Assembly: GCF_011386835.1 (NCBI RefSeq)
Contig: NC_088807.1
Location: 25,482,001 to 25,546,000 of the forward strand
Reading direction: 5' to 3'
DNA: 64,000 bases
Source: Chrysemys picta bellii
Taxonomy: Eukaryota
The notes beneath the pieces are model-generated. The model made no database searches and was not told the origin of the DNA. It worked only from the letters and a program-made list of their open reading frames with translations. Shown in pieces: positions 19,172 through 59,611 of the stretch (position 1 is the stretch's first letter; each line of letters opens with the position of its first letter). Position numbers and translations under genes: made by a program.

Positions 19172-20678
19172 AATACTGATAAATGGTTTTGTTTGGTCCC
19201 AGTGATGTTGGGGGGGGGGTGTTTCTGAACTGGGGGGGGGGTCAGATGGCCCATCCACCCCAGATGAGAACTATGGACCCAGTGAGCCTGGATCCGCCCT
19301 CCCCAGGGTCTGTTAAACACAGTCTTCAAGTCAGCGGCACTGCGATGGGTCCCTGCATGGCCCCACAGTAGGCCGACATTTTTATGGCTGACTTAGAACA
19401 ACACTTCCTCAGCTCTCGTCTCCTAGTGCCGCTCCTCTACTTGTGCTACATTGGGGACATCATCATCTGGACCCACGGCAAGGAGGCCCTTGAAGAATTC
19501 CACCTGGATTTCAACAACTTCCACCCCACCAACAACCTCAGCGTGGACCTGTCCACACAAGAGATCCACTTCTTGCACACTACAGTGCAAATAAGCGAAG
19601 GTCACATAAACACCACCCTATACCGGAAACCTACTGACCACTACACTTACTTACATGCCTCCAGCTTCCATCCAGGACACATCACACGATCCACTGTCTA
19701 CAGCCAAGCCCAAAGATACAACCAATCCCTCAGACAGAGACAAACACCTACAGGATCTCTATCAAGGGTTCTTAAAACTACAATACCCACCTGGGGAAGT
19801 GAGAAAAGAGATTGACAGAGCCAGACGGGTACCCAGAAGTCACCTACTACAGGACAGGCCCAACAAGGACAATAACAGAACACCACTGGCCATCACATAC
19901 AGCCCCCAGCTAAAACCTCTCCAGCGCATCATCAACGATCTACAACCTATCCTGGAAAACAATCCCTCACTCTCACAGACCTTGGGAGACAGGCCAGTCC
20001 TCGCCTACAGACAGCCTCCCAACCTGAAGCAAATACTCACCAGCAACTACACATCACACCACAGAAACACCAACCCAGGAACCAAACCCTATAACAAACC
20101 CCGTTGCCTTCTCTGTCCCCATATCTACTCTAGCGACACCGTCAGAGGACCCAACCACATCAGCCACACCATCAAGGACTCATTCACCTGCACATCTACC
20201 AATGTGATATATTCCATCATGTGCCACCAATGCCCCTCTGCCATGTACATTGGCCAAACCGGACAGTCTCTACATAAAAGAATAAATGGACACAGATCGG
20301 ACATCAGGAATGGTAACATACAAAAGCCAGTAGAAGAACACTTCAATCTCCCTGGACATTCAATAACAGATTTAAAAGTAGCCATCCTGCAACAAAAAAA
20401 CTTCAGAAACAGACTTCAAAGAGAAACTGAAGAACTAAAATTCATTTGCAAATGTAACACCATTAATTTGGGCTTGAATGGGGACTGGGAGTGGCTGGCT
20501 CATGACAGAAGCAACTTTCCCTCTCCTGGAATTGACACCTCCTCATCAATTGTTGGGAGTGGACTACATCCACCCTGATCGAATTGGCCCTGTCAACGCT
20601 GGTTCTCCACTGGTGAGGTAACTCCCTGCTCTTCACGTGTCAGTATAATAACGCCTGCATCTGTAATTCTCACTTCTT

Positions 20679-20720
20679 GCATCTGAAGAAGTCGGGTTTT
20701 TTACCCACAAAAGCTTATGC
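20679..20720 (+). ncRNA. Degenerate minimal type I hammerhead ribozyme in the Penelope-like element terminus
   Basis: GCAT-CTGAAGA-A-GTCGGG-TTTTTTA-CCCAC-AAAA-GCT-T-ATGC: stem I GCAU/AUGC, CUGANGA box, imperfect stem II, palindromic AGCU stem III. The GAAA box reads AAAA. Confidence 0.7.
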
Positions 20721-20753
20721 CCAAATAAATCCGTTAGTCTTTAAGGTGCCACC

Positions 20754-20976
20754 CAGGGCCGGCTCCAGGCACCAGCTTGGCAAGCAGGTGCTTGGGGCGG
20801 CCGCTCCAGAGAGGGGCGGCACGTCCAGCTGTTTGGCAGCAATTCCGCGGACGGTCCCTCACTCCCGCTCGGAGCGAAGGACCTCCCACCGAAGTGCCGC
20901 TGCAGATCACGATCGCGGCTTTTTTTTTTTTTTTTTTGAGCTGCTTGGGGCAGCCAAAACCCTGGAGCCGGCCCTG
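20754..20976. mobile_element. Non-autonomous hAT-type MITE (223 bp) nested in the Penelope-like element
   Basis: Perfect 16-bp terminal inverted repeats CAGGGCCGGCTCCAGG / CCTGGAGCCGGCCCTG and 8-bp target-site duplication GTGCCACC (20746-20753, 20977-20984). Confidence 0.92.
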
Positions 20977-21247
20977 GTGCCACCGGACTCCTTGTTGTTT
21001 TTGTGGATACAGACTAACACGGCTACCCCGATACTTCTTAAAACACAGGTCACGTCCGGCCTTATAAATGATCATGTTACAATGACACTGACACTCTCTA
21101 CTGCCAGGAAAAGGAATACCCCCCTCCATTGCTCACCCGGTGCTGAGATGCAGCCACCTCTGGGGGGGGGGGGGGCACCTGGGGAACAGTGGCATATAAC
21201 GCCACAAGGGGACAGCTCAGACTCGGATCCAGGTTTTAAAGGTCTCT

Positions 21248-21253
21248 TTTATT
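21248..21253 (-). terminator. Probable PRICKLE3 polyadenylation signal
   Basis: TTTATT on + (AATAAA on -), about 1.38 kb downstream of the PRICKLE3 stop. Confidence 0.55.
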
Positions 21254-21524
21254 AAAAAGGTTGCTTTTTCTTCTTTAAATTAACCCTTTAATAGAAAAAC
21301 AAATTGGAAGGTTAAATTCCAGACACAGCAGGGACCCCAATTCTGTACTGGGGCCAGTACAGGGTGTACTCCCATACATAACTGTACCCCCATTCTCTGC
21401 AACCCCCCTCCCCCTTCCCCCCAGCGCAGCCCCAAAGAGGGTCTGGAGGGTGGGAACTGAACCCCCCAATTGTTCCACTATTAAACAATCAAAAAAAACC
21501 TGATCTAAATGGGGGAACACACCA

Positions 21525-21556
<32 letters not shown>

Positions 21557-21577
21557 AAATCCTGCTGACCCCCTCCC

Positions 21578-22629
21578 AGGTCAAAGTTCAAAGGTCACAA
21601 TGGACAAGTCACAGGTCAGTGATGATCCCCCATGTGAGAGGGATGAAAGGTCAAAGCACAAAAGTCAACAGGTCAAGGGCCCCAAAGTCACAGTGCAAGG
21701 GTCCCATCCAAAAGGCAAAGGTCAGAGTGGGAAGGCATTTTCAGGGGTTAGAGGTCAAAGTTCCCAGCCAAAACTCAAGGGGCACAGTGGAAAGGTCAAA
21801 GGCCACAAGGGAAAGCTCACCACCAGCAGGTCAAAGGTCGCCACCAAATCTAACCAGCCACAGTAGAAAGGTGCCAACCAGAGTTCAAAGGTCACCGATG
21901 CAAAGATCCTGAGTAGGGTTCAAAGGTCACAATGGGCAGGTCAGTGTTCATAGGTCCCTGAGGAGAGGTCAAAAATCACAAGGGCGAGGTCCAACCATCC
22001 ACAGCCCCGGGGCAAAGACAAGGGGCAAGGTCGCTGTTGAGAGGCCATTGCCCCAGGATCCTTGGCCAGAGGTTAAAGTTGAAAGGTCACAGCACAAAGT
22101 CCCAGGTCGACAAGGTCAAAGGTCACAACGGAAAGGTCAAAGTCCAAAGGTCCCCAGTGAAACGTGATGAGTTAAGGTCATAGTGGAAAGATCAACCGCC
22201 GAGCATTCACAGCAAAGGTCAGAGGTCACCACAGAGGCCAATGGCTAAGGATTCCAGACAAAAGGTCACAAAGGTCATAGATCTGGAAAGGTCACAGATC
22301 AAAGGTCAGAGATTCCAATGCAGAAGCCAATCGCTGAGAGTCCCAGGTGAAAGGTCAGGGGTGACACCAGAAAAGGTCGACGTTCAAAGGTCCTCCATGG
22401 AAGGTGACCACTAAAGGTCAGAACTCACAGCGGAGAGGTCAAAGTCTAAAGGTCACAAGCCACACTGGAGAGGTCAAAGCTCAAAAGGGTGACCAAAGGC
22501 TGCAAGCCGAGGTCAAAGGTTGCTGACGGGGGTCAGAGTTAAAAGGTCACGAGTGCAGGTCAGAGGCCGCCGTGGACAGGTCACACTGGAGAGGTCGTTG
22601 CCAGCAGGAGGGTCAAAGTTCAAAGGTCA
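21578..22629 (+). repeat. Dispersed array of 34 AGGTCA hexamers in the PRICKLE3 3' UTR
   Basis: Hand count: 34 exact AGGTCA on +, no TGACCT on +, with heterogeneous spacers. Confidence 0.9.
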
Positions 22630-22631
22630 AC

Positions 22632-25600
22632 TCAGGCCACCACGCAGCTCCTGTCCCGAGCCCCCCGCAGCCCCTGGCGCCTTTTTCCCCCTCCCTGCCG
22701 GGGGGGTCCCGCCTCAGCGGCCGGAGGGGGGCTGGCCCCGCCCCGCAGGTGGGGAGGCAGGGGGATGGGCTCCCCGAGGAAGTAGCCTTCCTCCTCCGAG
22801 TCCGAGGAGGAAGAGGAGGAGGAGGAGTCGTGCCAGGGGCCGCCGCGGCCCCGGAGGTAGCGGCGCCGGTGGCTGGGGGGGAAGGCCCCCTCCGAGGCCG
22901 AATAGACCAAGCGCCGCCCCCCCCGGCCCTGCTCCTCCGGGGGGAGCCCCCCCCCAGGCTCCTCCTCCCCCACCAGGTGCAGGGCGTTGTCGGAGGAGGA
23001 GCAGGGCCGGGCGCGGGGACGGCGCCGATGCAGTTGGGCGCTGCGGGACCCCCCCGGCTCGCCCGCCACCAGGGGCTCGCGGAAGCTCACTCGGGGGGCG
23101 GCACCCCGGGGGAAGCCTCCCTCCCCCGCTGCCGCCCCCCCGCCCTCCAGGGCGGGCCCCAGGCTAAGCCGGGGGGAGACCGAGAGCTTGGAGACGGAGC
23201 TGCTGGTCCAGTCGGCCCCCTTGGCCGGGGCCAGGCCTAGCTCGGGCATGGAGTGTCGGTGGGGGACGCCGCGGTGGAAATGGGACGTGGAACCTGGGGG
23301 GAGAGAGACGGGGCGGGGGGTTAGAGACAGGAGCTGCCATGCCGCCCACCTCCCCCCCACCGCTGGGATCCCCCCCCCATCTGTGCACCCCCCGCTGCCC
23401 CCCTCCGGGATTGCTCCCCAGTCTCACCTCCTTCCTCCTCCTCCGGGGGTCGTGGGCAGGTGGAGGTGCCCCGTGAGGTGCATCCGGCCGGCTCACCCCC
23501 CTCCTCCGCCCCGGGGGTCCCGCTCCAGCTGCGCCGCCCGCCAGGGTCCGAGCCCCGGGCTGGGGCAGGGCGGCTGGCGAAGGAGACGGAGCGGGCGACA
23601 GGCGGGCGGCGGAGGGGGGCCCGGCGCCCGTCCTGGGGGCGGGGGCCGTGGAGGGCGGAGTCGCAGGAGTCTGAGGCACTGGCCTCGTCCCCCCCCAGGC
23701 TGCAGCCGCGGGAGCAGAAGATCTGCCCCCCCTTGGGGAGGAAGGGTTTGCCCAGCAGCGGCAGCCGGCAGCGGGTGCAGCAGAAGCAGGTGTCGGTGGC
23801 GTGCCAGTGCTGGCCCTCGTAGGTCATCTGGCCCTGGTTGATGCCTGCGGGGGGCAGAGATGGGGGCACAATGTCACCCAGGACTCCAGGGTTCTATTCC
23901 AGCTCTGGGAGGGGAGAGGGGGCTGGAACGGGGGGTGGGGCTGGGGCTGGGAGCCAGGACCCCTCGGTTCTATTCTGATGCCTGGGTGCTCCCTACACCC
24001 CCCGCCCCCACTTCCCGGGCACCTGCTTTCCTGCTTCATGAATCCCCGGACACCTGGGTCCCTCTGCTGCCTAGGTGCTCCCTCCTTTTCCATTGCCTGG
24101 AGGCCGGGGACCCCCTGCTGCCCGGACACCTGGGTCCTCCACTCTTTATTGTCCCCGGATACCAAGTCTCCCCACTCTCCACAGTCCCTGGATGCCATGT
24201 CCCCCTGCTGCCTAGACACTGGGGTGCCCTGCTCTCCAGGTCCCCAGACAGCAGGACCCCCTGCTACCCAGATGCCGGGGTCCCCCCGCTCTTCGTGGTC
24301 CCCAGATGCCGAGTCCCTCTGCTGCCTAGACACCAGGTCCCCCCGCTCTCCACGGTTCCCGTACACCAGGTCCCCCCACAGCCCGGTGTAGCCCATGGGG
24401 TTACTTTCCTAGCTTCCTATATTATATAATCGGTTTGATCAATTATATGATTTTGGTGTTTCCATTTCAGCAGCCATTATCTCGTTCTACTCGGCTGTAC
24501 GCAAGGAACCTGCAGGCCTGTATCCTGTCTGATTAGCTAGAGTGAGTTAGCACACGTGTCTGTAATCTTTGGCCTAGATAGCTGCGGCCCACCGGTTACC
24601 CCTTGTGACTCTGAATGGGGAACCAAATGTGTTTACCCAAACTCTGGGACGGACCGGTAACCGCAAGGGCATAGAAGTAACGGCTCAGGCCAAAGGAAAC
24701 GCTTTCGAGAACGAGCTAATCGAGATGAATGCGCAGGACTATGTGAGAACGTGCCAGCCCATGAAGTAAGCGTCCCCTATCCAGCTCAGATTTGAGCATG
24801 GACGGCCGGGCACAGGTTCGAATATTCTGGATACTGCCAGGACGCCGTAAGGGAGCGAAGCGCCAGACGCTCTAGAGCGGGACGACGTCTTTGGGGCGCT
24901 GTGATTCGGAGCTTTGGTTACTCGCTCGTTTGGTTGAATGGACTGAACTCGCTTCACTAATTCTGTAGCCTGATTTTGGGACAGTATCTGCTGGTCAGAT
25001 CACTGGCGAGCCTATGATAAATCAGCCCCATATAATCAGGGGTTAACATCGGACGCCGGGGTCCGCCTGTTCTCCACGGTCCCCAGGTCCCCCCACTGCC
25101 CAGACGCTGGGGTCTCCCCGCTCTCCATGGCTCCCAGACACCAGCTCCCCCTGCTACCCGGACGCCGGCGTCTGCCTCTTCTCCACGGTCCCCGGACCCT
25201 GGGTCCCGCCACTTCCCAGATGCCAGGGTCCCCCCACTCTCCATGGCTCCCAGACACCAGCTCCCCCTGCTGCCTGGACGCCGGCGTCTACCTGTTCTCC
25301 ACGGTCCCCACATGCTGGGTCCCCCCACTGGCCGGATGCTGAGGTAACCCCGCTCTCCACGGTCCCCAGAACCCAGGTCCCCCCGCTGCCCGTACGCCGG
25401 GGTCCCCCCGCTCTCCACGGTCCCCAGACCCCGGGCCCCCCCACTCTCCACGGTCCCCAGACCCCAGCTCCCCTCGCTGCCCGGACGCCAGGGTCCCCCC
25501 GCTCTCCACGGTCCCCAGACCCCGGGTCCCCCCGTTGCCCGGACACTGGGGCCCCCCTGCTCTCCACAGTCTCCAGACCCTGGGTCCCCCCGCTGCCCGG

Positions 25601-28600
25601 ACGCCGGGGTCCCCCCGCTCTCCACAGTCTCCAGACCCCGGGTCCCCCCGCTGCCCGGACGCCGGGGTCCCCCCGCTCTCCACGGTCCCCAGACCCCAGC
25701 TCCCCCCGCTGCCTGGACGCCAGGGTCCCCCCCGCTCTCCACGGTCCCCAGACCCCGGGTCCCCCCGCTGCCCAGACGCCAGGGTCCCCCCCGCTCTCCA
25801 CGGTCCCCAGACCCCGGGTCCCCCCGCTGCCCGGACCCCGGGTCCCCCCCGCTCTCCACGGTCCCCAGACCCCGGGTCCCCCCGCTGCCCGGACGACGGG
25901 GTCCCCCCGCTCTCCAGACCCCGGGTCCCCCCACTCTCCACGGTCCCCAGACCCCGGGTCCCCTCACTGCCCAGACGCCAGGGTCTCCCCGCTCTCCACG
26001 GTCCCCAGACCCTGGGTCCCCCCGCTGCCCGGACGCCGGGGTCCCCCTACCGATGGGCTCCCCGCAGGCGTCGCAGTACTCGGCGTAGAGGGCCTGGTAG
26101 CAGCGGCAGCAGTAGGGGCGGCTCTGACGCATGACGTAACGCTGCCCGCCCAGCGCCTCCTCGCACTCGAAGCAGCAGAAATGGCGCATGTGCCAGTGAC
26201 GGCCCTCGGCCTCCGTGCACTCGTCGGCGAAGATGATCTGGAGGGAGATGGAGGCACGTCCCTCTGACCCCCTGTGGGGACCCCCTCAGATTCCCCCCCA
26301 GGCCACCCTCCCGGACCCCACAATCCCAACCACAGAGAACCCGTCTGGACCATCAGATCCCCCCCACCGACCCCCTGATCCCCCCCACCACGCTCCTGCC
26401 CCCTGCAGAGCCCCACCGCCGGCCCCCCGCCCTCACCTCGTCACAGGCCTGGCAGCGGGGTTTGAGGTGCTCGGCGTGGTGCCGCCCGCAGTAGATCTTC
26501 CCCTCCTGGTAGAAGTAGATGAGATCCACCAGCAGCTCCTGGCAGGTCGTGCACTGGAAGCACTGGGGGTGCCAGCAGGCCCCGTGCCCCGCCCGGCTGG
26601 CAAACACCGCGATGTCCCCGCCACGGATCTGCTTCCCGCACTGCCCCGCAGAGAGAGAGAGAGAGACCGGTCACAGGGAGCCAGGCACCTGGCCTGTCCC
26701 CTCTGGGGGGCGCCGGCTCCCATCGGCCCCAGGGCAGGGATTGGCTGGCTCAGGGGGGGTGGGGAGTGGGGCAGGGGCCTGTCCCCTCTGGGGGGCGCCG
26801 GCTCCCACCAGCCCCAGGGCAGGGACTGGCTGGCTCAGGGGGCCGGGGAATGGGGCAGGGGCCTGTCCCCTCTGGGGGGCGCCGTCTCCCATCTGGCCCC
26901 AGGGCAGGGGGCTGGCTAGCGTGGGGGGCAGGGAACAGGGTAGGAGACTGACAGATGCTGCAATGCCCCCTCTGGCCTGTAGGTGTCACTGCTCAGCTAC
27001 TCGCTGACTGGTGCCTCCAAGGGCAGGGGGAGGGGAGCCGAGCTCTGGGCGGGGCTTTGGGCGCAGGCCCCGCCCCTCCTCACCCGACAGATGAGACTGG
27101 GCAGCATGGCCGGGACTGAGTGATCAGCATGGGATCAGAGCTGCCGGGACGTTAGCCAGAGAGAGAACCCAGCCGTCCGGGCTCCCAGCCCCCCCCTGCT
27201 CTAACCACTAGCGCCCACTCCCCTCCCAGAGCCAGGGAGAGAACCCAGGCGTCCGGGCTCCCAGCCCCCCCCGGCTGCTCTAACCACTAGCCCCCACTCC
27301 CCTCCCAGAGCCAGAGAGAGAACCCAGGCGTCCGGGCTCCCAGCCCCCCCCGGCTGCTCTAACCACTAGCCCCCACTCCCCTCCCAGAGCCAGAGAGAGA
27401 ACCCAGGAGTCCTGGCTCCCAGCCCCCCCTGCTCTAACCACTAGACCCCACTCCCCTCCCAGAACTCCCAATCAGCACCCACAACTCCCTGCCTGGCCGA
27501 GGGTGGCGTCCCGGCTCCCACAATGCTTTGCACAGCCCACGGGGGTGGGTTTTTGCTCCCAAAATCCCACTGGGGTAGTGGAGTGGGAGGGGCGAGAGGG
27601 GGCACAGGCGGGGGGGGCGTGCTGGGTACCTGCTCACAGATGGCACCAGTAATGGTGACCGGGAACAGCCGGACCATCCCCCGCCCGAGATTCTCCCGCT
27701 TCCGCTGCTGGGAGAAAAGCTTCAGCTCCTTCTTCTCTTCCTCCTCCAGAGGGCTGCAGTACTGAGCCTGGGACACGGAGACCAACTGAGCCAGCTCCAA
27801 AATACAGCCAGCTCTGGGGTGGGGCAGCCGGGGAACAGCCGCACATAACGGCGCATGGGGACGGCTCGGCCGGCGCTGAGATGCAGCCAGCTCTGGGGTG
27901 GGGCAGCTGGGGAACAGCCGCAGAGACACCACAGACCAGTCTGGGGCGGGAAGAGAGACCAAGGGAGGCCGACTGGAATCCCTTGAACTGGGATTTGGCC
28001 CGGATGCCGGGGTTCGCTCCTGGTCTCTTGGGGGAAAATATGCCAGGGGAACTTTTAGATCAGGATCTCGTTTAGGGCCGCCTCCTGCCGCACGGAGCCG
28101 GCCTGCCAGAGGAGGTGCCCCCCCGCCCAGCCCCCCAGAGCCTGGCCCCTCACCTCGCTGTCGTGGGGGGGCAGCTGGTGCAGGAGCTGGCGGATCCGGT
28201 ACCGCTCTCCAGGACTGTTCACATAGGGCACCTTGTCCTCAGGGAGGCAGCTGAAAAACTGATACACCTGGCGTGGGGAGAAGGGCGGGGGGGGGGGGGG
28301 GGGCGTGAGAGGTGTCAGGCCCAGGGGGCGTGGCCTGGCCACCCCAAGGGGTGGAGTCACAGAGCAGGGTTGGGGCTGGGATGGCCACAGGGGGAGGAGC
28401 TGGAAGGGCGGCGCCGTGCCTTCGATTCCCCCCGCCCCCCCCGTAGGTTATCTCTGGCCCCTATGCGGGCGTGGCTTCGGCCCCCTTGGGGGTGGGTCTA
28501 GGATCCCAATGGGGGGCGGTGTCCATGTACCTATGTGGGCGTGGCTTCCACCTCCAGGAATAAAGGGGTGGGGCTATGGGACACCTCACTACAGGAGGCG

Positions 28601-31600: not shown

Positions 31601-34544
31601 CCCCCTCCCCACACAGCCCCCTCCCCACACCCCTCGCCAGGGGATTGACCCCAAAGCCGCATTAAACCCGACCCCTTAATACCACCAGCGAGTTAATCCT
31701 GACCCAGATGAGAGACAATCCCCACCCCCAACATCGGGGAGGTGGCGCTGGTGGCTGAAGCAGCCTGGATTATTCCCCACCCCCCCAGCTGTAATTCCAT
31801 CCATGAGGGGTACATTTAATAACCCCCCCCCATTACCTCCACTCAACTGTCCCCCTGGAGAGCTAGAAGCGCCTGGGGGGGTCTGATTGGGGTGATGGAG
31901 GCGGGATACCGGGGTAGACGGGCCCCTGGGTCCGGCCGGGGGCGAGGGAGGCGGGACGCCGGGGCAGACGAGCCCCTGGGTCCGGCCGGGGGCGAGGGAG
32001 GCGGGACGCCGGGGTAGACGGGCCCCTGGGTCCGGCCGGGGGCGAGGGAGGCGGGACGCCGGGGTAGACGGGCCCCTGGGTCCGGCCGGGGGCGAGGGAG
32101 GCGGGACGCCGGGGTAGACGGGCCCCTGGGTCCGGCCGGGGGCGAGGGAGGCGGGACGCCGGGGTAGACGGGCCCCTGGGTCCGGCCGGGGGCGAGGGAG
32201 GCGGGACGCCGGGGTAGACGGGCCCCTGGGTCCGGCCGGGGGCGAGGGAGGCGGGACGCCGGGGTAGACGGGCCCCTGGGTCCGGCCGGGGGCGAGGGAG
32301 GCGGGACGCCGGGGTAGACGGGCCCCTGGGTCCGGCCGGGGGCGAGGGAGGCGGGATCCCGGGGTAGACGGGCCCCTGGGTCCGGCCGGGGGCGAGGGAG
32401 GCGGGATGCCGGGGTAGAGGGGCCCCTGGGTCCGGCCGGGGGCGATGGAGGCGGGATGCCGGGGTAGAGGGGCCCCTGGGTCCGGCCGGGGGCGATGGAG
32501 GCGGGAAGCCGGGGCAGAGGGGCCCCTGGGTCCGGCCGGGGGCGATGGAGGCGGGAAGCCGGGGCAGAGGGGCCCCTGGGTCCGGCCGGCGGGGATGGAG
32601 GCGGGATGCCGGGGCAGACGGGCCCCTGGGTCCGGCCGGGGGCGAGGGAGGCGGGATGCCGGGGTAGAGGGGCCCCTGGGTCCGGCCGGGGCGATGGAGG
32701 CGGGATGCCGGGGTAGAGGGGCCCCTGGGTCCGGCCGGGGCGAGGGAGGCGGGATGCCGGGGTAGACGGGCCCCTGGGTCCGGCCGGGGGCGAGGGAGGC
32801 GGGACGCCGGGGCAGACGGGCCCCTGGGTCTGGCCGGGGGAGAGGGAGGCGGGACGCCGGGGCAGACGGGCCCCTGGGTCCGGCCGGGGGAGAGGGAGGC
32901 GGGACGCCGGGGCAGACGGGCCCCTGGGTCCGGCCGGGGGCGATGGAGGCGGGAAGCCGGGGCAGAGGGGCCCCTGGGTCCGGCCGGGGCGATGGAGCCG
33001 GGACGCCGGGGCAGACGGGCCCCTGGGTCCGGCCGGCGGGGATGGAGGCGGGACGCCGGGGTAGACGGGCCCCTGGGTCCGGCCGGCGGGGATGGAGGCG
33101 GGACGCCGGGGTAGACGGGCCCCTGGGTCCGGCCGGCGGGGATGGAGGCGGGACGCCGGGGTAGAGGGGCCCCTGGGTCCGGCCGGGGGCGATGGAGGCG
33201 GGACGCCGGGGTAGACGGGCCCCTGGGTCCGGCCGGGGGCGAGGGAGGCGGGACGCCGGGGTAGACGGGCCCCTGGGTCCGGGGCGAGGGAGGCGGGACG
33301 CCGGGGTAGACGGGCCCCTGGGTCCGGCCGGGGGCGAGGGAGGCGGGAAGCCGGGGCAGACGGGCCCCTGGGTCCGGCCGGGGGCGAGGGAGGCGGGACG
33401 CCGGGGTAGACGGGCCCCTGGTCCGGCCGGGGGCGAGGGAGGCGGGACGCCGGGCAGACGGGCCCCTGGGTCCGGCCGGGGGCGAGGGAGGCGGGACGCC
33501 GGGGCAGACGGGCCCCTGGGTCCGGCCGGGGGCGAGGGAGGCGGGACGCCGGGGTAGACGGGCCCCTGGGTCCGGCCGGGGGCGATGGAAGCGGGAAGCC
33601 GGGGTATACGGGGGTCTGACGAGGGGCAGCAGAGTGGGAAGTGGGGCAATCGTAACCAGGAGTCGCCCTGCCCCATGTAGGGCAGGTGCCACAGCTGGTT
33701 TGCCCTAGAGGAGGGAAACTGAGTCAGCCAGCTGGGTCAGCTGGTAACATCCCCTGGGGGGAGGGGAGAAAACTCCCCACCTGTCAACAGCAAAACAATC
33801 AGCTCCCCAGTGCCGGCCTGTGCCCCCAGCCCCCTGAACTCCTGCCCCACGGCGCCCCCCAGCGCCCGGCCCTGACTGCCAGCCAGGGGACAGCGACCAC
33901 CCCAGCCCCCTGCCCTCACCCACCCTCCTGCCCCACGGCGCCCCCCAGGGCCCGGCCCTGACTGCCAGGGACAGTGACCCCCCCAGCCCCCTGCCCTCCC
34001 CCACCCTCCTGCCCCACGGCGCCCCCCAGGGCCCGGCCCTGACTGCCAGGGGACAGTGACCCCCCCAGCCCCCTGCCCTCCCCCACCCTCCTGCCCCACG
34101 GTGCCCCCCAGCGCCCGGCCCTGACTGCCAGGGGACAGCGACCCCCCCCAGCCCCCTGCCCTCACCCACCCTCCTGCCCCACGGTGCCCCCCAGCGCCCG
34201 GCCCTGACTGCCAGGGGACAGCGACCCCCCCAGCCCCCTGCCCCTCCCCACCCTCCTGCCCCACGGTGCCCCCCAGCGCCGGCCTGACTGCCAGGGGACA
34301 GCGACCCCCCCAGCCCCCTGCCCTCACCCACCCTCCTGCCCCACGGTGCCTCCCAGCGCCCGGCCCTGACTGCCAGGGGACAGCGACACCCCCCCGAGCC
34401 ACCCGCAGCACGGCGCCCCCCCCGTTCTCCCCTCCCCACGCTGTGCGGGGGGGGGGGGGCAGCCCACCCCCGACCGTCCCCGAGACCCCCCCCAGCACTC
34501 ACGGGGCGGGAGGAGCGTCGGCGCCGAGACCCCCGAGTGAACAT
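22632..34544 (-). CDS. PRICKLE3: Prickle planar cell polarity protein 3 (PET + 3 LIM domains + CaaX), complete, 677 aa
   Basis: Nine in-phase GT-AG exons: 34503-34544 ([14 protein letters not shown]), 30118-30203, 28720-28903 ([13 protein letters not shown]...[12 protein letters not shown]), 28154-28267, 27630-27767, 26437-26640, 26051-26237, 23428-23844, 22632-23293 (...PRVSFREPL...[15 protein letters not shown]...RSCVVA*). The N-terminus, [10 protein letters not shown] and exon layout match PRICKLE3. Confidence 0.96.
24050..26048 (+). repeat. Alternating 33/24-bp minisatellite in PRICKLE3 intron 7, split by the solo LTR
   Basis: GGGTCCCCCCGCTCTCCACGGTCCCCAGACCCC alternating with GGGTCCCCCCGCTGCCCGGACGCC. 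Confidence 0.85.
24387..25048. mobile_element. Probable solo LTR in PRICKLE3 intron 7
   Basis: 662-bp unique, lower-GC block with TG...CA ends (TGTAGCCC...GGGGTTAACA). It interrupts the intronic minisatellite and has a near-perfect 4-bp target-site duplication CCGG/TCGG. Family not identifiable by eye. Confidence 0.65.
28915..29645 (+). repeat. VNTR of about 34 bp in PRICKLE3 intron 2
   Basis: Unit GAGAGACCCTACAATAA(C/T)ACACC(A/G)GCCCC(A)CCCC. Confidence 0.88.
31895..33610 (+). repeat. Homogeneous CpG-rich 50-bp VNTR (about 34 units) in PRICKLE3 intron 1
   Basis: Unit GGCCCCTGGGTCCGGCCGGGGGCGAGGGAGGCGGGACGCCGGGGTAGACG, period 50 (31921, 31971, 32021...). Confidence 0.95.
33840..34390 (-). 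repeat. Minisatellite in PRICKLE3 intron 1 related to the MAGIX and PLP2 VNTRs
   Basis: On -: GGGGGTCGCTGTCCCCTGGCAGTCAGGGCCGGGCGCTGGGGGGCACCGTGGGGCAGGAGGG. Confidence 0.8.
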
Positions 34545-39980: not shown

Positions 39981-40480
39981 NNNNNNNNNNNNNNNNNNNN
40001 NNNNNNNNNNNNNNNNNNNNNNNNNNNNNNNNNNNNNNNNNNNNNNNNNNNNNNNNNNNNNNNNNNNNNNNNNNNNNNNNNNNNNNNNNNNNNNNNNNNN
40101 NNNNNNNNNNNNNNNNNNNNNNNNNNNNNNNNNNNNNNNNNNNNNNNNNNNNNNNNNNNNNNNNNNNNNNNNNNNNNNNNNNNNNNNNNNNNNNNNNNNN
40201 NNNNNNNNNNNNNNNNNNNNNNNNNNNNNNNNNNNNNNNNNNNNNNNNNNNNNNNNNNNNNNNNNNNNNNNNNNNNNNNNNNNNNNNNNNNNNNNNNNNN
40301 NNNNNNNNNNNNNNNNNNNNNNNNNNNNNNNNNNNNNNNNNNNNNNNNNNNNNNNNNNNNNNNNNNNNNNNNNNNNNNNNNNNNNNNNNNNNNNNNNNNN
40401 NNNNNNNNNNNNNNNNNNNNNNNNNNNNNNNNNNNNNNNNNNNNNNNNNNNNNNNNNNNNNNNNNNNNNNNNNNNNNNNN
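39981..40480. other. Assembly gap (500 N)
   Basis: Run of exactly 500 N; sequence resumes inside the MAGIX last exon (equivalent to 4934). Confidence 1.
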
Positions 40481-43600: not shown

Positions 43601-45789
43601 ACACCTGGGTCGGGGGGACAGGTGTCTCGGGGGGGGGGAGGTCTGGGTACAGCTGGATGGATAGAGGAGAGTGTGTGGAGATAGAGGGGGTGGGAGGATA
43701 GAGGGGAGTGGGGGGAAGGAGGGATGTGGGGGGGATGGGTGAGTGGCTAGTGGGGTGGGAAAAGGAGCGGTGGGGAGATGGGTGGGAGATAGAGGGGCGG
43801 AGGGATGGAGGGCTGTGGGGGGAAGGGGTGGGGAATAGAGGGGCAGGGGATAGAGGGGCAGAGGGATGGAGGGCTGTGGGGGGAAGGGGTGGGGGATGGG
43901 TGGGGGGATAGAGGGGCAGGGGATGGAGGGAGGTGGGGGGATAGAGGGGCAGAGGGATGTAGGGCTGTGGGGGGAAAGGGTGGGGGGGATAGAGGGGTGT
44001 GGGGGATGGGTGGGGGATAGAGGGGTGGGAGATAGAGGGGCAGGGGATGGAGGGCTGTGGGGGAAGGAGCGAGAAGGGGTGGGGGGAGGAGGGATGTGGG
44101 GAGGGGTGGGGGCTAGAGGGGCAGGGGATGGAGGGCTGTGGGGGAAGGAGCGGGAAGGGGTGGGGGGAGGAGGGATGTGGGGAGGGGTGGGGGCTAGAGG
44201 GGCAGGGGATGGAGGGCTGTGGGGGGAAGGAGCGGGAAGGGGTGGGGGGAGGAGGGATGTGGGGAGGGGTGGGGATAGAGGGGTGGGGGGAGGAGGGATG
44301 TGGGGAGGGTGAGAGATAGAGGGGCAGGGGATGGAGGGCTGTGGGGGGAAGGAGCGAGAAGGGGTGGGGGGAGGAGGGATGTGGGGAGGGGTGGGGGCTA
44401 GAGGGGCAGGGGATGGAGGGCTGTGGGGGGAAGGAGCGAGAAGGGGTGGGGGGAGGAGGGATGTGGGGAGGGGTGGGGATAGAGGGGTGGGGGGGTGGAT
44501 TGTGGGGGAAGGAGCGGGAAGGGGTGGGGGATAGAGGGGTGGGGGGGATGTGGGGAGGGGGAGGAGATAGAGGGGCAGGGGATGGAGGGCTGTGGGGGGA
44601 AGGAGCGGAAGGGGTGGGGGGAGGAGGGATGTGGGGAGGGTGAGAGATAGAGGGGCAGGGGGAGGAGGGATGTGGGGAGGGGTGGGGATAGAGGGGTGGG
44701 GGGGGATGTGGGGAGGGGGAGGAGATAGAGGGGCAGGGGATGGAGGGCTGTGGGGGGAAGGAGCGGGAAGGGGTGGGGGATAGAGGGGTGGGGGGAGGGA
44801 TGTGGGGAGGGGTGGGAGATAGAGGGGCAGGGGATGGAGGGCTGTGGGGGGAAGGAGCGAGAAGGGGTGGGGGGGAGGGATGTGGGGAGGGGTGGGAGAT
44901 AGAGGGGCAGGGGATGGAGGGCTGTGGGGGAAGGAGCGGGAAGGGGTGGGGGGAGGAGGGATGTGGGGAGGGGTGGGGGCTAGAGGGGCAGGGGATGGAG
45001 GGCTGTGGGGGGAAGGAGCGGGAAGGGGTGGGGGAGGAGGGATGTGGGGAGGGGTGGGGGCTAGAGGGGCAGGGGATGGAGGGCTGTGGGGGGAAGGAGC
45101 GGGAAGGGGTGGGGGGAGGAGGGATGTGGGGAGGGGTGGGGGCTAGAGGGGCAGGGGATGGAGGGCTGTGGGGGGAAGGAGCGGGAAGGGGTGGGGGGAG
45201 GAGGGATGTGGGGAGGGGGTGGGGGCTAGAGGGGCAGGGATGGAGGGCTGTGGGGGGAAGGAGCGGGAAGGGGTGGGGGGAGGAGGGATGTGGGGAGGGG
45301 TGGGGGCTAGAGGGCAGGGGATGGAGGGCTGTGGGGGGAAGGAGCGGGAAGGGGTGGGGGATCGAGGGGCGGAGAAGGGAAGGGGGGAGATACGGACACA
45401 AGCAGGGGGGTGACTAGATCCCTTCTCTGTCCCGTCTAAGCCATTTGTAAAGCACAGAGCCGGCGGGGGGGGGGGGGTCCAGGTGCGCCCCTCCCTCCCT
45501 CTGGCTTCCTCTGTTATTTGTCCCCAGCGCCCCATAACCAGCGGGGCTTCTCCCCTGGGCCCCCCACACCTCCTAACCCGCCAGCGCCACCTTAACCGGG
45601 CTCCGGCGCCCTCCGATGCCACCTTAACCGGGCTCCGGCGCCGCTCCCCACCCAATGCTCCCCCCGGCTCCTCTTAAAGGGCCAGCCCCGCCCACCCCCC
45701 CGCGCCCCGCCCGGCCCCGCCCTGCCCTGTCGGCTGCCCGCGTTGACAGTCGCTTGACAGCCGGAGCCGACTGGGGGTTCTCCGGGGCC

Positions 45790-48165: not shown

Positions 48166-51100
48166 CTGTGCGCCAGGGCGTGGATGCCATGTGGCTGGAA
48201 GGGCGCGGTGTGTTTGTGTGTATCTAGCCGTGTGTTGGTGTGTGCAGATTAGGGGTGGGGCTGTGGGATGTGTGTGTGTTTGCATTGTGGAAGGGGAGGT
48301 GTGGGCAGTGCCCCATGTCTGCAGGGGGGGGGTGTTTTAGGGTCTCTGTGATCCTGGGCCTAGGACAGCTCCCTCTCCAGGCCCCAGGGGCTGGAGTCTA
48401 TTTGCGGGGTGTGTGTGGGGGGAGACTATAATCCTGACTCCACCCCACCGTCTGCCCCTCAGATCTGGTTGTTCCCTGCCCCCCACCCCCTGCACCTCAC
48501 CCAGAATCAATGATTAACCACCCTGCCGCCCTGCCCAGCTCTTGCAAAGGGAGAAATGAGCCAAAGAGAGAACCCAGGAGTCCTGGCTCCCAGCCTGCTC
48601 CCTCCCCCCCACGCTGCAATCCACTATACCCCACTCCCCTCCCAGAGCCGGGGAGAGAACCCAGGAGTCCTGGCTCCTAGCCCGCCCTGGTCTAATCCAC
48701 CAGACCCCACTCCCCTCCCAGAGCCGGGGAGAGAACCCAGGAGTCCGGGCTCCCAGCCCTCCCTGCTCTAACCACTAGACCCCACTCCCCTCCCAGAGCC
48801 AGGGAGAGAACCCAGGCATCCTGGCTCCCAGCCCCCCTGCTCTAACCACTAGACCCCACTCCCCTCCCAGAGCCAGGGAGAGAACCCAGGAGTCCTGGCT
48901 GCCAGCCCCCCGTGCACTAATCACTAGGCCCCACTGTCCTGATTTTCCTTCTGAAAGGGGCAGGGCTCCTTTAAGGCTCAGGGGCATGTTCTCCCGGGGA
49001 GGAGAAAGGGCGTTTTTGGGGTGGGCGTGGGAGCAGCAGGTCCCGGCAGGACCGAGGTGCGGGTGGGTGGGGAACATACACCCAGTTCTGCGCCCTGTCC
49101 AGACCTGTCTGGTGCCTCGCTTTCCCCACCCCTCCGCTGCTAGGGCGGCTGCCACAGCGGGCTGGCCCGTTAAGTGCTCGTCGGGGGGACCCCATCCCTT
49201 TAGGACCCACCACCACCACGGCCCCTCCGCCTGTTGCAGGTTCCATCCCTGTAACATCCCACATCACCTCTGCCTGTTCAATGCACCGCCCTTGTAACAG
49301 TCCCCCCACTCTGCCTGTAGCAGGCACCACCCCGTAACAGCCCCCCGCTCCGCCTGTAGCGGGCACCGCCCCGTAAACAGCCCCCCGCTCCGCCTGTAGC
49401 GGGCACTGCCCCTTTAACAGTCCCCCCACTCTGCCTGTAGCAGGCACCACCCCGTAACAGCCCCCCAATCCGCCTGTAGCGGGCACTGCCCCTGTAACAA
49501 CCCCCCACTCTGCCTGTTCAATGCACCGCCCCTGTAACAGCCCCCCCGCTCCGCCTGTAGCAGGCACTGCCCCGTAACAGCCCCCCACTCTGCCTGTAGC
49601 AGGCACCGCCCCTGTAACAGCCCCCCACTCTGCCTGTAGCAGGCACCGCCCCTGTAACAACCCCCCACTCTGCCTGTAGCAGGCACCGCCCCTGTAACAG
49701 CCCCCCTCTGCTCCGCCTGTAGGGGGCACCCCTTTCACAGCCCCCCCCACTCCACCTGTAGCAGGCACCGCCTCTTTAAGACCCCCCCCATGTGCCCCTG
49801 CCTGTGACAGACTCCACCCCCCCTCTGAATATTTGGCAGGGGGGGAGCTGGTTGAATTTAGTGGTTGTCATGGCGACCGGCCCCACCCCCCACCCTCCAC
49901 ACACTCGCCCCTTTGTGTGCCCAGCGTGGGCTGGTATTTTTAGCCTCCAGATGTGACTCGAGCTGGAACATTCCCCAGGCGCCCCGAATGCCCCGCCCAG
50001 CCCACGCGGGACCCAGGAGTCCGGGCTCCCACTCCCTCCCACCCCCCAACCACTAGGCCCACTCCCCTCCCAGAGCCAGGGAGAGAACCCAGGAGTCCTG
50101 GCTCCCAGCCCCCCTGCTCTAACCACTAGCCCCCACTCCCAGGAATGTACAGGAAAGCGGCGGGTGAGTCAGACCCTTGGCAGAGAAGCAGACGCCCGTC
50201 TTGCAGCTAATGGAATATTACAGCGTGACTCAGACTCTCCAACCACCCCCTTGCCCTTCCTGGGGGGCGCTGTGCTGCAGGGAGCCGGGGCGCTGGGCAG
50301 GGGGTGCTCTCCCCTGGCAGTCAGAGCCGGGCACTGGGGTGGGGGCTGGGCAGGGGGCGCTCTCCCCTGGCAGTCAGGGCCGGGCACTGGGGTGGGGGGC
50401 TGGGGGGCTGGGCAGGGGGCGCTCTCCCCTGGCAGTCAGGGCCGGGGCACTGGGGGGGGCTGGGCAGGGGGTGCTCTCCCCTGGCAGTCAGGGCTGGGCA
50501 CTGGGGGGGGCTGGGCAGGGGGTGCTCTCCCCTGGCAGTCAGGGCCGGGCACTGGGGTGGGGGGCTGGGGGGCTGGGCAGGGGGCGCTCTCCCCTGGCAG
50601 TCAGGGCCGGGCACTGGGGGGGGCTGGGCAGGGGGCGCTCTCCCCTGGCAGTCAGGGCCGGGCACTGGGGGGGGCTGGGCAGGGGGCGCTCTCCCCTGGC
50701 AGGTCAGAGCCGGGCACTGGGGTGGGGGGCTGGGCAGGGGGCGCTCTCCCTGGCAGTCAGGGCCGGGCACTGGGGTGGGGGGCTGGGGGGCTGGGCAGGG
50801 GGCGCTCTCCCCTGGCAGTCAGGGCCGGGCACTGGGGGGGGCTGGGCAGGGGGTGCTCTCCCCTGGCAGTCAGGGCCGGGCACTGGGGGGGGCTGGGCAG
50901 GGGGCGCTCTCCCCTGGCAGTCAGGGCTGGGCACTGGGGGGGGCTGGGCAGGGGTGCTCTCCCCTGGCAGTCAGGGCCGGGCACTGGGGTGGGGGGCTGG
51001 GGGCTGGGCAGGGGGCGCTCTCCCCTGGCAGTCAGGGCCGGGCACTGGGGGGGGCTGGGCAGGGGGCGCTCTCCCCTGGCAGTCAGGGCCGGGCACTGGG

Positions 51101-58564: not shown

Positions 58565-59611
58565 AGGTCAAAGTTCAAAGGTCACAATAGACAAGTCACA
58601 GGTCAGTGATGATCCCCCATGTGAGAGGGATGAAAGGTCAAAGCACAAAAGTCAACAGGTCAAGGGCCCAAAGTCACAGTGCAAGGGTCCCATCCAAAAG
58701 GCAAAGGTCAGAGTGGGAAGGCATTTTCAGGGGTTAGAGGTCAAAGTTCCCAGCCAAAAGTCAAGGGGCACAGTGGAAAGGTCAAAGGCCACAAGGGAAA
58801 GCTCACCACCAGCAGGTCAAAGGTCGCCACCAAATCTAACCAGCCACAGTAGAAAGGTGCCAGAGTTCAAAGGTCACCGATGCAAAGATCCTGAGTAGGG
58901 TTCAAAGGTCACAATGGGCAGGTCAGTGTTCATAGGTCCCTGAGGAGAGGTCAAAAATCACAAGGGCGAGGTCCAACCATCCACAGCCCCGGGGCAAAGA
59001 CAAGGGGCAAGGTCGCTGTTGAGAGGTCATTGCCCCAGGATCCTTGGCCAGAGGTTAAAGTTGAAAGGTCACAGCGCAAAGTCCCAGGTCGACAAGGTCA
59101 AAGGTCACAACGGAAAGGTCAAAGTCCAAAGGTCCCCAGTGAAACATGATGAGTTAAGGTCATAGTGGAAAGATCAACCGCCGAGCATTCACAGCAAAGG
59201 TCAGAGGTCACCACAGAGGCCAATGGCTAAGGATTCCAGACAAAAGGTCACAAAGGTCATAGATCTGGAAAGGTCACAGATCAAAGGTCAGAGATTCCAA
59301 TGCAGAAGCCAATCGCTGAGAGTCCCAGGTGAAAGGTCAGGGGTGACACCAGAAAAGGTCGATGTTCAAAGGTCCTCCATGGAAGGTGACCACTAAAGGT
59401 CAGAACTCACAGCGGAGAGGTCAAAGTCTAAAGGTCACAAGCCACACTGGAGAGGTCAAAGCTCAAAAGGGTGACCAAAGGCTGCAAGCCGAGGTCAAAG
59501 GTTGCTGACGGGGGTCAGAGTTAAAAGGTCACGAGTGCAGGTCAGAGGCCGCCGTGGACAGGTCACACTGGAGAGGTCGTTGCCAGCAGGAGGGTCAAAG
59601 TTCAAAGGTCA
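58565..59611 (+). repeat. AGGTCA array in PRICKLE3 3' UTR, copy 2
   Basis: Colinear with 21578-22629. Confidence 0.88.

What the first reader, a model, noticed from the sequence alone, without database searches (positions are those of the whole stretch)
21578..22629. One-strand array of 34 AGGTCA hexamers filling the PRICKLE3 3' UTR
Seen: 34 exact AGGTCA in 1052 bp on + (chance expectation well under 1) and none in the other orientation. Spacers are unrelated, so this is not an ordinary tandem repeat. Variants AGTTCA, GGGTCA and AAGTCA also occur. The array starts right after the stop codon and is bracketed at both ends by the same triple unit RGGTCA-A-AGTTCA-A-AGGTCA (21578-21597, 22610-22629). 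Copy 2 keeps it (58565-59611). Established: RGKTCA is the nuclear-receptor half-site; DR1 spacing is bound by HNF4, COUP-TF, RXR and PPAR, and AAGGTCA by ERR/NR5A/NR4A. On the mRNA strand UGACC, UGACU and GAACU all fit the m6A DRACH consensus. Inference: a motif preserved while spacers diverged suggests selection, either as a homotypic nuclear-receptor binding cluster or as an RNA-level (m6A or RNA-binding protein) array. A decayed (AAGGTCA)n microsatellite is the null model.
Basis: partly seen in the sequence, partly recalled or inferred. Interest (0 to 1): 0.75.

Follow-up and report, generated by a model that had tools for sequence, protein, structure and literature searches.

The report
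Ancient heptamer repeat in PRICKLE3 3'UTR
The 1-kb stretch right after the stop codon of a turtle's PRICKLE3 gene is the worn remnant of a 7-base tandem repeat (TGACCTN on the mRNA) that arose before turtles and lizards split and is copied into the mRNA; I found little sign that the exact hexamers are themselves protected.

Summary
The count is real. There are 34 exact AGGTCA on + in 21578-22629, none on the other strand, against about 0.3 expected. The array begins 2 nt after the stop codon of a minus-strand PRICKLE3 last exon. A spliced RNA contig carries the whole array, so it lies in the 3'UTR and fills about 76% of it.

The claim that the spacers are unrelated is wrong. The whole stretch has 7-nt periodicity and aligns to (TGACCTT)n with z of about 21. 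It is a degenerate heptamer minisatellite of about 150 units.

The array is orthologous and alignable in Macrochelys (37 motifs) and Lepidochelys (33). A shorter, more decayed version sits at the same place in five squamates (5-9 motifs) and in one unnamed taxon (14). A frog and an echidna lack it. It is therefore probably a sauropsid-stem expansion.

In turtles, motif sites evolve at 0.56-1.0 times the spacer rate (P=0.8, 0.044, and 0.14 without CpG sites). Squamates clearly constrain the whole UTR, because their introns do not align while the UTR does at 73%.

One embedded 8-mer, CTCAGGGA (a miR-125 seed match), is kept in 8 of 9 sauropsids.

Verdict: an old transcribed repeat relic inside a functional 3'UTR. 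Selection on the hexamer itself is unproven, and nuclear-receptor or m6A roles are untested.

The parts
21578..22629 (-). Degenerate heptamer array, about 150 units of TGACCTN on the mRNA strand (AGGTCA on +). It holds 34 exact hexamers, 40 RGKTCA and 8 DR1 pairs.
   Evidence: counts and periodicity; repeat pieces; wraparound alignment, z about 21; DR1 and DRACH counts.
22632..22634 (-). PRICKLE3 stop codon (TGA), 2 nt upstream of the first array motif.
   Evidence: ORF 22632-23360(-) ends ...CVVA*. The same C-terminal tail is seen in turtle PRICKLE3 proteins.
22635..23294 (-). Last coding exon of PRICKLE3.
   Evidence: tblastn of Macrochelys PRICKLE3 residues 134-353. It is 94% identical to Mauremys mutica PRICKLE3.
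23292..23427 (-). Last intron, about 134 nt. The cut is ambiguous by 2 nt. It is removed in the RNA contigs.
   Evidence: read laying joint 23291->23426 with ends CT..AC on +, which is GT..AG on the minus strand. Seen in X8, X12 and X14.
21241..22631 (-). Whole 3'UTR, about 1.39 kb. The array is its first 1052 nt.
   Evidence: The spliced contig of X14 covers 21573-23291 plus 23426-23600. Contigs of X8 and X12 end at about 21244. The UTR is alignable to its end in three turtles.
21955..21962 (-). CTCAGGGA on the mRNA strand, an 8-mer match to the miR-125a/b seed, embedded in the array.
   Evidence: It occurs once per UTR in the window (position 670), Macrochelys (675), L006 (673) and five squamates (215-238). 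Lepidochelys has CTCAGAGA. CUCAGGGA is the validated miR-125 seed match in PMC3733964.
21524..21552 (-). T29 run on the mRNA strand (A29 on +), just after the array. Its length varies.
   Evidence: TRF. It is 22 long in copy 2 and only 6-8 long in Macrochelys and Lepidochelys.
21248..21253 (-). AATAAA poly(A) signal, preceded by a deeply conserved block (TTTTCTATTAAAGGGTTAATTTAAA, about 21275-21300).
   Evidence: The TAATTTAA block is also present in squamates, L006 and echidna, where it lies 36 nt after the stop.
58565..59611 (-). Copy 2 of the array, with 35 exact hexamers. It is part of a duplicated block that begins at the end of an N gap.

Best explanation
The array is the fossil of a heptanucleotide tandem repeat (unit TGACCTN on the mRNA strand, about 150 units). 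It expanded between the PRICKLE3 stop codon and the conserved poly(A)-signal block in the stem lineage of sauropsids.

Shown:
- It is repeat-derived.
- It is transcribed as most of the PRICKLE3 3'UTR.
- It is positionally orthologous in three turtle families.
- A shorter, more decayed version lies at the same place in squamates and in one further taxon.
- It is missing in one frog and one monotreme.

Inferred:
- Since the expansion it has mainly decayed by point substitutions and small indels.
- Turtles still show 33-37 perfect hexamers because their substitution rate is several times lower than that of squamates, not because the hexamer is individually protected.
- The UTR as a whole is a working 3'UTR under mild (turtles) to clear (squamates) constraint, and it has acquired ordinary post-transcriptional elements. 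The best example is one conserved miR-125 8-mer site.
- The one-strand orientation and the DR1 spacing are automatic consequences of head-to-tail 7-nt repetition.
For: Repeat origin:
- 7-nt periodicity runs through the whole array and phase drifts by indels.
- Wraparound alignment gives z of about 21 in the window, 12 in L006, 6-9 in squamates and 0 in the frog.
- Higher-order pieces have periods 14, 21 and 35.

Transcription:
- A spliced RNA contig spans the array and the last two exons. Its GT..AG orientation places it on the minus strand.

Orthology and age:
- The window-Macrochelys array aligns at 91%, and three turtles align end to end.
- Same-strand TGACCT counts after the stop are 34, 37 and 33 in turtles, 14 in L006, 5-9 in squamates, 0 in the frog and 1 (a chance-level count) in the echidna.
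- CTCAGGGA lies at the same offset in turtles and L006 and is present in all squamates.

Neutral-like decay in turtles:
- Motif and spacer divergence are 0.079-0.10 against 0.088, P=0.8.
- Consensus-restoring to consensus-destroying singletons are 4:21 in the window lineage and 3:29 in Lepidochelys. The null ratio is about 7:61.
- The seventh heptamer position is no better kept than in shuffles, and the other six are kept about equally.

Slow turtle clock:
- Turtles evolve at about one third of the human rate and one fifth of the python rate (PMC4054807).

Constraint at the UTR level:
- Phrynosoma and Gekko align only in exons and in this UTR (73%).
- Non-CpG divergence between window and Macrochelys is 0.066 in the array and 0.096-0.121 in introns.
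Against: - The polarised three-turtle test shows fewer changes at ancestral motif sites: 13/422 against 87/1580 branch-sites, P=0.044. This weakens to P=0.14 without CpG sites.
- About 11 motif losses by substitution were seen on two branches, against about 21 expected from the spacer rate (my arithmetic).
- Gecko-defined motif columns are better conserved among the other squamates: 0.80-0.82 against 0.72, P=0.016-0.07.
- Squamates keep 5-9 exact hexamers. A 3-5 times faster neutral clock would predict about 0-2 (my arithmetic, using the rates).
- Macrochelys has an excess of consensus-restoring changes: 14 against about 4 in the other lineages.

Each of these points would fit weak selection for motif multiplicity.
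Confidence: 0.55

Rival explanations
1. RNA-level multivalent element. The many UGACCU(U) or UGAMCU copies in the PRICKLE3 mRNA are themselves the functional units. They could be a landing platform for an RNA-binding protein, or a dense DRACH (m6A) field just after the stop codon, controlling stability, translation or localisation. Selection would act on motif number rather than on each copy, which allows turnover.
For: - The array is in the mature, spliced mRNA.
- There are 58 DRACH matches on the mRNA strand against 9.5 +/- 2.8 in shuffles, and only 10 on the other strand.
- The region is retained at the same UTR position in turtles, squamates and L006.
- The squamate UTR is conserved where introns are not.
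- Motif columns are slightly better kept in squamates (P=0.016-0.07), and motif sites are slightly slower in the polarised turtle test (P=0.044).
Against: - No protein or conserved microRNA family known to me reads UGACCU, and the literature search found none.
- The pairwise turtle test shows no motif protection, and the polarised signal fades without CpG sites.
- The blocks invariant in all five squamates (CTCAGGG, TCCATTGTGGCCTTT, ACTGTGA, CTTCTTACC, TTGCCATTA) are not the hexamer.
- The echidna and the frog do without the array.
- The DRACH enrichment follows automatically from the repeat unit.
Confidence: 0.28
2. DNA-level homotypic nuclear-receptor cluster. The 40 RGKTCA half-sites, 8 of them as DR1 pairs, bind HNF4, COUP-TF, RXR or PPAR-type receptors (or ERR/NR5A monomers at AAGGTCA). 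The array would act as an enhancer or silencer for PRICKLE3, the convergent synaptophysin-like gene or other neighbours.
For: - There are 40 RGKTCA on + against 0.9 in shuffles.
- There are 8 DR1 pairs, one DR3 and no other spacing.
- 21 of the 34 hexamers carry the 5' A of the extended monomer site.
- It is established knowledge, not tested here, that DR1 is the HNF4/COUP-TF/RXR element.
Against: - DR1 spacing and single orientation are forced by a 7-nt head-to-tail repeat, so they carry no independent information.
- Half-sites are not clearly better conserved than other positions in turtles.
- The array is confined exactly to the transcribed interval between the stop codon and the poly(A) block in every species, which a DNA element has no reason to respect.
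- No chromatin or binding data could be consulted.
Confidence: 0.08
3. Recent lineage-specific microsatellite or assembly artefact. The array would be a young expansion or a mis-assembly peculiar to this genome.
For: - The window holds two nearly identical copies, and the second starts right at an assembly gap.
Against: - The same array, base-for-base alignable, is in independent assemblies of Macrochelys and Lepidochelys.
- It is also in DNA and RNA runs of at least three other coded organisms.
- Decayed versions exist in squamates.
Confidence: 0.01

Closest known systems
Degenerate minisatellite or microsatellite-derived tandem repeats inside 3'UTRs
   Same: Head-to-tail units on one strand, a recoverable consensus (TGACCTN), higher-order pieces of 14, 21 and 35 nt, and transcription as part of the mRNA.
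   Different: - It is not a variable, turning-over locus. The units are fixed in place and alignable between turtle families at 91%.
- Traces persist at the same site in squamates, so it is very old.
- TRF reports only fragments.
DR1 nuclear-receptor response elements (HNF4A, COUP-TF/NR2F, RXR, PPAR) and extended monomer sites (ERR, NR5A, NR4A)
   Same: Exact RGKTCA half-sites, 8 of them paired with 1-nt spacing. 21 of the AGGTCA copies carry the 5' A of the extended monomer site.
   Different: - There are forty sites in 1 kb of 3'UTR rather than one or two in a promoter or enhancer.
- Spacing and orientation are explained by the repeat.
- No binding evidence exists, and there is no clear extra conservation of half-sites in turtles.
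m6A DRACH clusters near stop codons and in 3'UTRs
   Same: The array has 58 DRACH matches on the transcribed strand, starts at the stop codon, and is in a mature mRNA.
   Different: DRACH is a loose consensus that the repeat unit happens to fit. Methylation was not tested, and the frog and echidna orthologues lack the field.
Conserved miR-125/lin-4 8-mer target sites (CUCAGGGA)
   Same: A single exact 8-mer is kept in 8 of 9 sauropsid UTRs, at matching offsets in turtles and L006. The same 8-mer is the validated miR-125a/b seed match in PMC3733964.
   Different: It is one site embedded in the array, not the array motif. Regulation by miR-125 in reptiles was not tested.
CTCF-motif minisatellite in another turtle 3'UTR, noted earlier in this scan (s1-322505)
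   Same: Both are old tandem arrays of a protein-binding-like motif kept in a turtle 3'UTR for about 100 million years or more (an AI note that I did not check).
   Different: The unit differs (48 nt against 7 nt), as do the motif and the gene. The present array is much more degenerate and reaches beyond turtles.

Membership tests
Tandem repeat (heptamer minisatellite, degenerate) | Head-to-tail periodicity at the unit length across the whole stretch | tested here: met
   Autocorrelation peaks at 7, 14, 21, 28 and 35, and 18 of 33 spacings are multiples of 7. The wraparound score is 554 against -256 +/- 39.
Tandem repeat (heptamer minisatellite, degenerate) | A recoverable consensus unit | tested here: met
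   The consensus is TGACCT plus a variable seventh base (T over G and C). Per-position match is 0.62-0.79 for positions 1-6 and 0.53 for position 7. The TRF consensus is AGGTCAA.
Tandem repeat (heptamer minisatellite, degenerate) | Copy-number change by unit-sized gain or loss between relatives | tested here: inconclusive
   Indels between turtles are 4-26 nt long (for example a 26-nt and a 13-nt block) and are mostly not multiples of 7. The array length is almost constant, with the last exact motif at UTR position 1049, 1061 and 1031 in the three turtles.
Nuclear-receptor response-element cluster | RGKTCA half-sites in DR spacing | tested here: met
   40 half-sites and 8 DR1 pairs on +. The repeat period explains this trivially.
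Nuclear-receptor response-element cluster | Half-sites conserved above their surroundings | tested here: inconclusive
   Turtles give P=0.8, P=0.044 for all sites and P=0.14 without CpG sites. Squamates give P=0.016-0.07.
Nuclear-receptor response-element cluster | Occupancy by a nuclear receptor, open chromatin, enhancer activity | not testable with these tools
   No ChIP or ATAC data were available.
m6A (DRACH) field in a 3'UTR | DRACH matches on the transcribed strand of a mature mRNA | tested here: met
   58 matches against 9.5 +/- 2.8 in shuffles. A spliced RNA contig covers the array.
m6A (DRACH) field in a 3'UTR | Actual methylation | not testable with these tools
   Only assembled contigs of RNA runs were available.
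miR-125 target site (single embedded element) | 8-mer seed match in the 3'UTR, conserved across lineages | tested here: met
   CTCAGGGA is present in the window, Macrochelys, L006 and five squamates. It is mutated in Lepidochelys. The seed identity is from PMC3733964.
miR-125 target site (single embedded element) | Repression by the microRNA | not testable with these tools
   This needs a reporter assay.
Known structured RNA family (Rfam) | Covariance-model match | tested here: not met
   No match up to E=1 in 21100-22800 on either strand.

The most novel reading that the evidence does not exclude
The heptamer field is a functional, multivalent cis-element of PRICKLE3 that sauropsids have kept for roughly 280-300 million years (dates from general knowledge). 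It would most likely act at the RNA level, as a platform for a still unknown UGACCU-reading protein or a dense m6A field next to the stop codon. Selection would act on motif number rather than position. This would explain why squamates, despite fast clocks, still hold 5-9 exact copies and an alignable UTR.
Probability: 0.25. Interest if true: 0.7.

Novelty: new member of a known kind. Interest (0 to 1): 0.35.

Why it matters
- It shows how a simple repeat can become the bulk of a gene's 3'UTR and remain recognisable for hundreds of millions of years in slowly evolving genomes.
- That makes turtles a useful place to read the origin of UTR sequence that looks unique in faster lineages. The squamate UTR aligns as ordinary conserved sequence but still carries the 7-nt phase.
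- It is also a caution for motif scans. Dozens of perfect one-strand nuclear-receptor half-sites in DR1 spacing, and a six-fold DRACH excess, arise here from repeat history alone.
- If the minority reading is right, it would give a natural, graded series (0, 5-9, 14 and 33-37 motifs) for testing dose effects of a repeated 3'UTR motif on a planar-polarity gene.

Tried and rejected
- **Copy 1 against copy 2 as a conservation test.** Only 7 substitutions and 2 indels separate them, so the test has no power.
- **Rfam.** Nothing up to E=1.
- **Literature.** Nothing on AGGTCA arrays or minisatellites, on a PRICKLE3 UTR repeat, or on a UGACCU-binding protein. Searches failed on term syntax.
- **MicroRNA complementary to UGACCU.** From memory, none of the broadly conserved vertebrate seed families is AGGUCA. 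miR-192/215 carries UGACCU itself and would pair with the + strand. I have no evidence that the + strand is transcribed across the array.
- **Naming the taxon of L006 (SRR18112698).** A search with its last-exon protein found no relatives. A protein tree left it on a long unresolved branch. It shares the -CVVA end with sauropsids, so I only call it an unnamed, probably sauropsid taxon.
- **Look-ups of Emydura and Carettochelys loci.** These would have been the ideal turtle outgroups. They failed because those isoforms are not on record.
- **Deep positional alignment, turtle against squamate.** Only one 37-nt BLAST block (E=5e-5) plus the CTCAGGGA landmark. Other similarities may be between non-orthologous repeat units.
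- **Depth differences along the UTR in RNA contigs.** Not interpreted, because contig depths cannot rank parts of a gene.

Full report
**1. The observation**

The window holds 88 exact AGGTCA against 35.9 +/- 5.4 in shuffles. Sixty-nine of them lie on the + strand in two blocks, 21578-22629 (34) and 58565-59611 (35). Neither block has any on the other strand. From the shuffle rate, about 0.3 would be expected per 1052 nt per strand.

The gene lies on the minus strand:
- An ORF at 22632-23360 ends ...CVVA followed by a stop at 22632-22634.
- The next exon upstream carries a LIM domain.
- The best protein matches are turtle PRICKLE3 (Macrochelys 85%, Mauremys mutica 94% over the last exon).
- The first motif (22624-22629) sits 2 nt after the stop.
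The same AGTTCAAAGGTCA-type 13-mer also recurs inside the array.

**2. It is a tandem repeat**

Base autocorrelation peaks at 7, 14, 21, 28, 35 and so on (0.40 at lag 7, against 0.16-0.25 between peaks). Eighteen of 33 motif-to-motif distances are multiples of 7, and the phase drifts stepwise along the array as expected from small indels.
- A wraparound alignment to (TGACCTT)n on the mRNA strand scores 554 against -256 +/- 39 for shuffles.
- Positions 1-6 of the unit match the consensus in 62-79% of about 150 units. Position 7 matches no better than in shuffles.
- TRF sees only fragments with periods 7, 14, 21/22 and 35, and the repeat finder finds 14- to 46-nt families at 60-90% identity. The array therefore also grew by duplicating blocks of several heptamers.
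- One-strand orientation and DR1 spacing follow directly from this. There are 8 RGKTCA-N-RGKTCA pairs, one DR3 and no other spacing. The excess of DRACH matches on the mRNA strand (58 against 9.5 +/- 2.8) has the same cause.

**3. It is in the mRNA**

- Several small RNA-type runs of a close relative (organism C) hold about 80% of the words of the stretch, and a poly(A) RNA-seq run of another turtle (organism D) holds part of it.
- Laid on 20200-23600, one 3133-nt contig (X14) covers 21573-23291 and continues at 23426-23600. It skips 134 nt whose ends read CT..AC on +, which is GT..AG on the minus strand. Two other runs show the same joint. This is a spliced minus-strand transcript that contains the entire array.
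- Contigs of two runs end at about 21244, just after an AATAAA at 21248-21253. The 3'UTR is therefore about 1.39 kb, and the array is its first 1052 nt.
- Organism D's contigs match at about 95% and lack the same 26 nt that Macrochelys lacks.

**4. Related loci**

Loci were fetched through proteins found with the last exon.

| Taxon | Exact TGACCT after the stop | Notes |
|---|---|---|
| Window (turtle) | 34 | about 1.05 kb |
| Macrochelys suwanniensis | 37 | aligns to the window at 91% without gaps |
| Lepidochelys kempii | 33 | all three turtles align to the poly(A) signal |
| Phrynosoma, Gekko | 9 each | decayed heptamer field; about 550 nt in Phrynosoma, with motifs out to about 870 nt in Gekko because of a gecko-specific insertion (z = 6-9) |
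| Three unnamed squamates | 5-6 | tails like Phrynosoma and Gekko |
| L006 (unnamed taxon) | 14 | -CVVA end; about 1 kb before its AATAAA (z = 12) |
| Hymenochirus (frog) | 0 | no periodicity (z = 0) |
| Tachyglossus (echidna) | 1, at chance level | conserved poly(A)-region block begins about 20 nt after the stop |

None of these UTRs has an opposite-strand AGGTCA inside the array interval; the few recorded copies lie beyond it (L002 position 1173, L003 1049, L006 1200) or, in the echidna, at position 630.

The simplest reading is an expansion in the sauropsid stem, inserted between the stop and an older poly(A) block. Loss in mammals cannot be excluded, because only one mammal was examined.

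**5. Is the hexamer protected?**

- **Pairwise test, window against Macrochelys.**
  - 26 motifs are shared, 8 are window-only and 11 are Macrochelys-only.
  - Motif survival implies 0.10 changes per site. Union motif sites show 0.079 and spacers 0.088 (Fisher P=0.8).
  - Six of the 17 one-sided differences that involve substitutions rather than deletions are CGACCT/TGACCT, which is CpG decay creating the motif.
- **Polarised three-turtle test.** Ancestral states at the Macrochelys-Lepidochelys node were inferred with the window as outgroup.
  - There were 40 ancestral motifs.
  - Motif sites show 13 changes in 422 branch-sites against 87 in 1580 for spacers (P=0.044).
  - Without CpG sites the rates are 0.031 against 0.049 (P=0.14).
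- **Direction of change** (consensus-restoring to consensus-destroying singletons).
  - The ratio is 4:21 in the window lineage and 3:29 in Lepidochelys, close to the null ratio of about 7:61.
  - It is 14:21 in Macrochelys. This excess (P=0.0004 pooled) is confined to one assembly. It could be gene conversion or a polishing artefact, and I leave it unexplained.
- **Regional rate.** Non-CpG divergence is 0.066 in the array, 0.069-0.082 in the flanking UTR and intergenic DNA, 0.096-0.121 in introns and 0.053-0.055 in coding sequence. The whole 3' region is therefore somewhat slow, and the array is not special within it.
- **Squamates.**
  - Phrynosoma and Gekko align by BLAST only in exons and in this UTR (73% over 650 nt, plus two more UTR blocks). 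Introns and most of the last coding exon do not align. The region is clearly constrained there.
  - Motif columns defined in the gecko are better kept among the other four squamates than random 6-column blocks: 0.82 against 0.72 (P=0.07) for exact motifs and 0.80 (P=0.016) for motifs with at most one mismatch.
  - The blocks invariant in all five squamates are CTCAGGG, TCCATTGTGGCCTTT, ACTGTGA, CTTCTTACC and TTGCCATTA. None is the hexamer.

**6. Rate argument**

Turtles evolve at about one third of the human rate and one fifth of the python rate (PMC4054807). If a nearly pure array of about 150 units existed in the sauropsid ancestor, keeping about 23% of hexamers intact needs only about 0.25 substitutions per site on the turtle line. 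This is my arithmetic, and such a figure is plausible for a slow lineage. The turtle count therefore needs no selection. The same arithmetic predicts 0-2 intact copies in squamates, which in fact have 5-9. This agrees with the constraint seen.

**7. Embedded element**

CTCAGGGA occurs exactly once in each of the following UTRs:
- the window (UTR position 670, which is 21955-21962);
- Macrochelys (675);
- L006 (673);
- all five squamates (215-238).

Lepidochelys has a one-base variant. A given 8-mer is expected about 0.015 times per kb. CUCAGGGA is the experimentally validated seed match of miR-125a/b in another gene (PMC3733964). This is the best single candidate for a working site, and it serves as a positional landmark tying the arrays together.

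**8. Verdict**

- The array is an old, transcribed heptamer-repeat relic that forms most of a functional 3'UTR.
- Its spectacular motif statistics come from repeat history plus the slow turtle clock.
- Weak selection on motif multiplicity (RNA-level, about 0.28) or on DNA half-sites (about 0.08) is not excluded. No result here requires either.
- I found no description of this array in the searchable literature. As a kind of object (a degenerate minisatellite inside a UTR) it is known.
I did not check that note.

**9. Limits**

- Organism names of the runs are coded.
- The window species is inferred only as a Mauremys-like (geoemydid) turtle.
- The taxon of L006 is unknown.
- Divergence dates are from general knowledge.
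- No birds or crocodilians could be named among the hits.
- RNA evidence comes from assembled contigs, so expression level and exact 3' ends are approximate.

Noticed in passing
window 40481-63714 versus 4934-26949 (N gaps at 388-887 and 39981-40480): The second copy of the roughly 22-kb block starts exactly at the end of an N gap. Identity is 86-96% in blocks but about 99% in the array. It could be a recent segmental duplication or a falsely duplicated haplotype. Variants that separate the copies (for example 22045 C/T and 22094 A/G) both occur in RNA contigs of a related organism.
   Followed up: partly
window 59617-60290 (minus strand): The last PRICKLE3 exon of copy 2 is frameshifted relative to copy 1. 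The reading frame changes near the ...[13 protein letters not shown]... segment. Copy 2 is therefore either a pseudogene or carries an assembly error.
   Followed up: partly
window about 19430-21030: About 1.7 kb is present here but absent at the orthologous place in Macrochelys. Read-contig depth over 20200-21225 is in the thousands. This is probably a high-copy transposable element inserted between PRICKLE3 and the convergent MARVEL-domain (synaptophysin-like) gene.
   Followed up: no
window 21275-21300 (minus strand); L009 about 20-45 nt after the stop: The block TTTTCTATTAAAGGGTTAATTTAAA, upstream of the poly(A) signal, is conserved in turtles, squamates, L006 and echidna. In the echidna it follows the stop codon almost directly. 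TAATTTAA also occurs once in the frog UTR.
   Followed up: partly
L001 (Macrochelys) 7343-8420: Macrochelys alone shows 14 singleton sites where it has the heptamer consensus base and the other two turtles do not. The window has 4 such sites and Lepidochelys 3. Possible causes are gene conversion among units or a polishing artefact in that assembly.
   Followed up: partly
window 21524-21552: An A29 homopolymer (T29 on the mRNA) lies directly after the array. It is 22 long in copy 2 and 6-8 long in the other turtles. RNA contigs break there.
   Followed up: no
window 31889-33612, 8521-10166, 43666-45360, 50280-51808, 25050-26048: Several long tandem arrays, with self-matches offset by about 50-100 nt, lie in introns and intergenic DNA of this GC-rich region. 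One is inside a PRICKLE3 intron.
   Followed up: no
window 22866-23062: One RNA contig (X8) skips 197 nt inside the last coding exon with non-canonical ends (CC..GC). This may be an assembly collapse in GC-rich, repetitive coding sequence or a deletion allele.
   Followed up: no
L006 1-190 and 1090-1200 after the stop (locus 4617 onward): The unnamed taxon carries a different GC-rich tandem motif (GGAGTCTGGGGAACCCAGG-like). It lies both between the stop and its heptamer field and again after the poly(A) signal.
   Followed up: no
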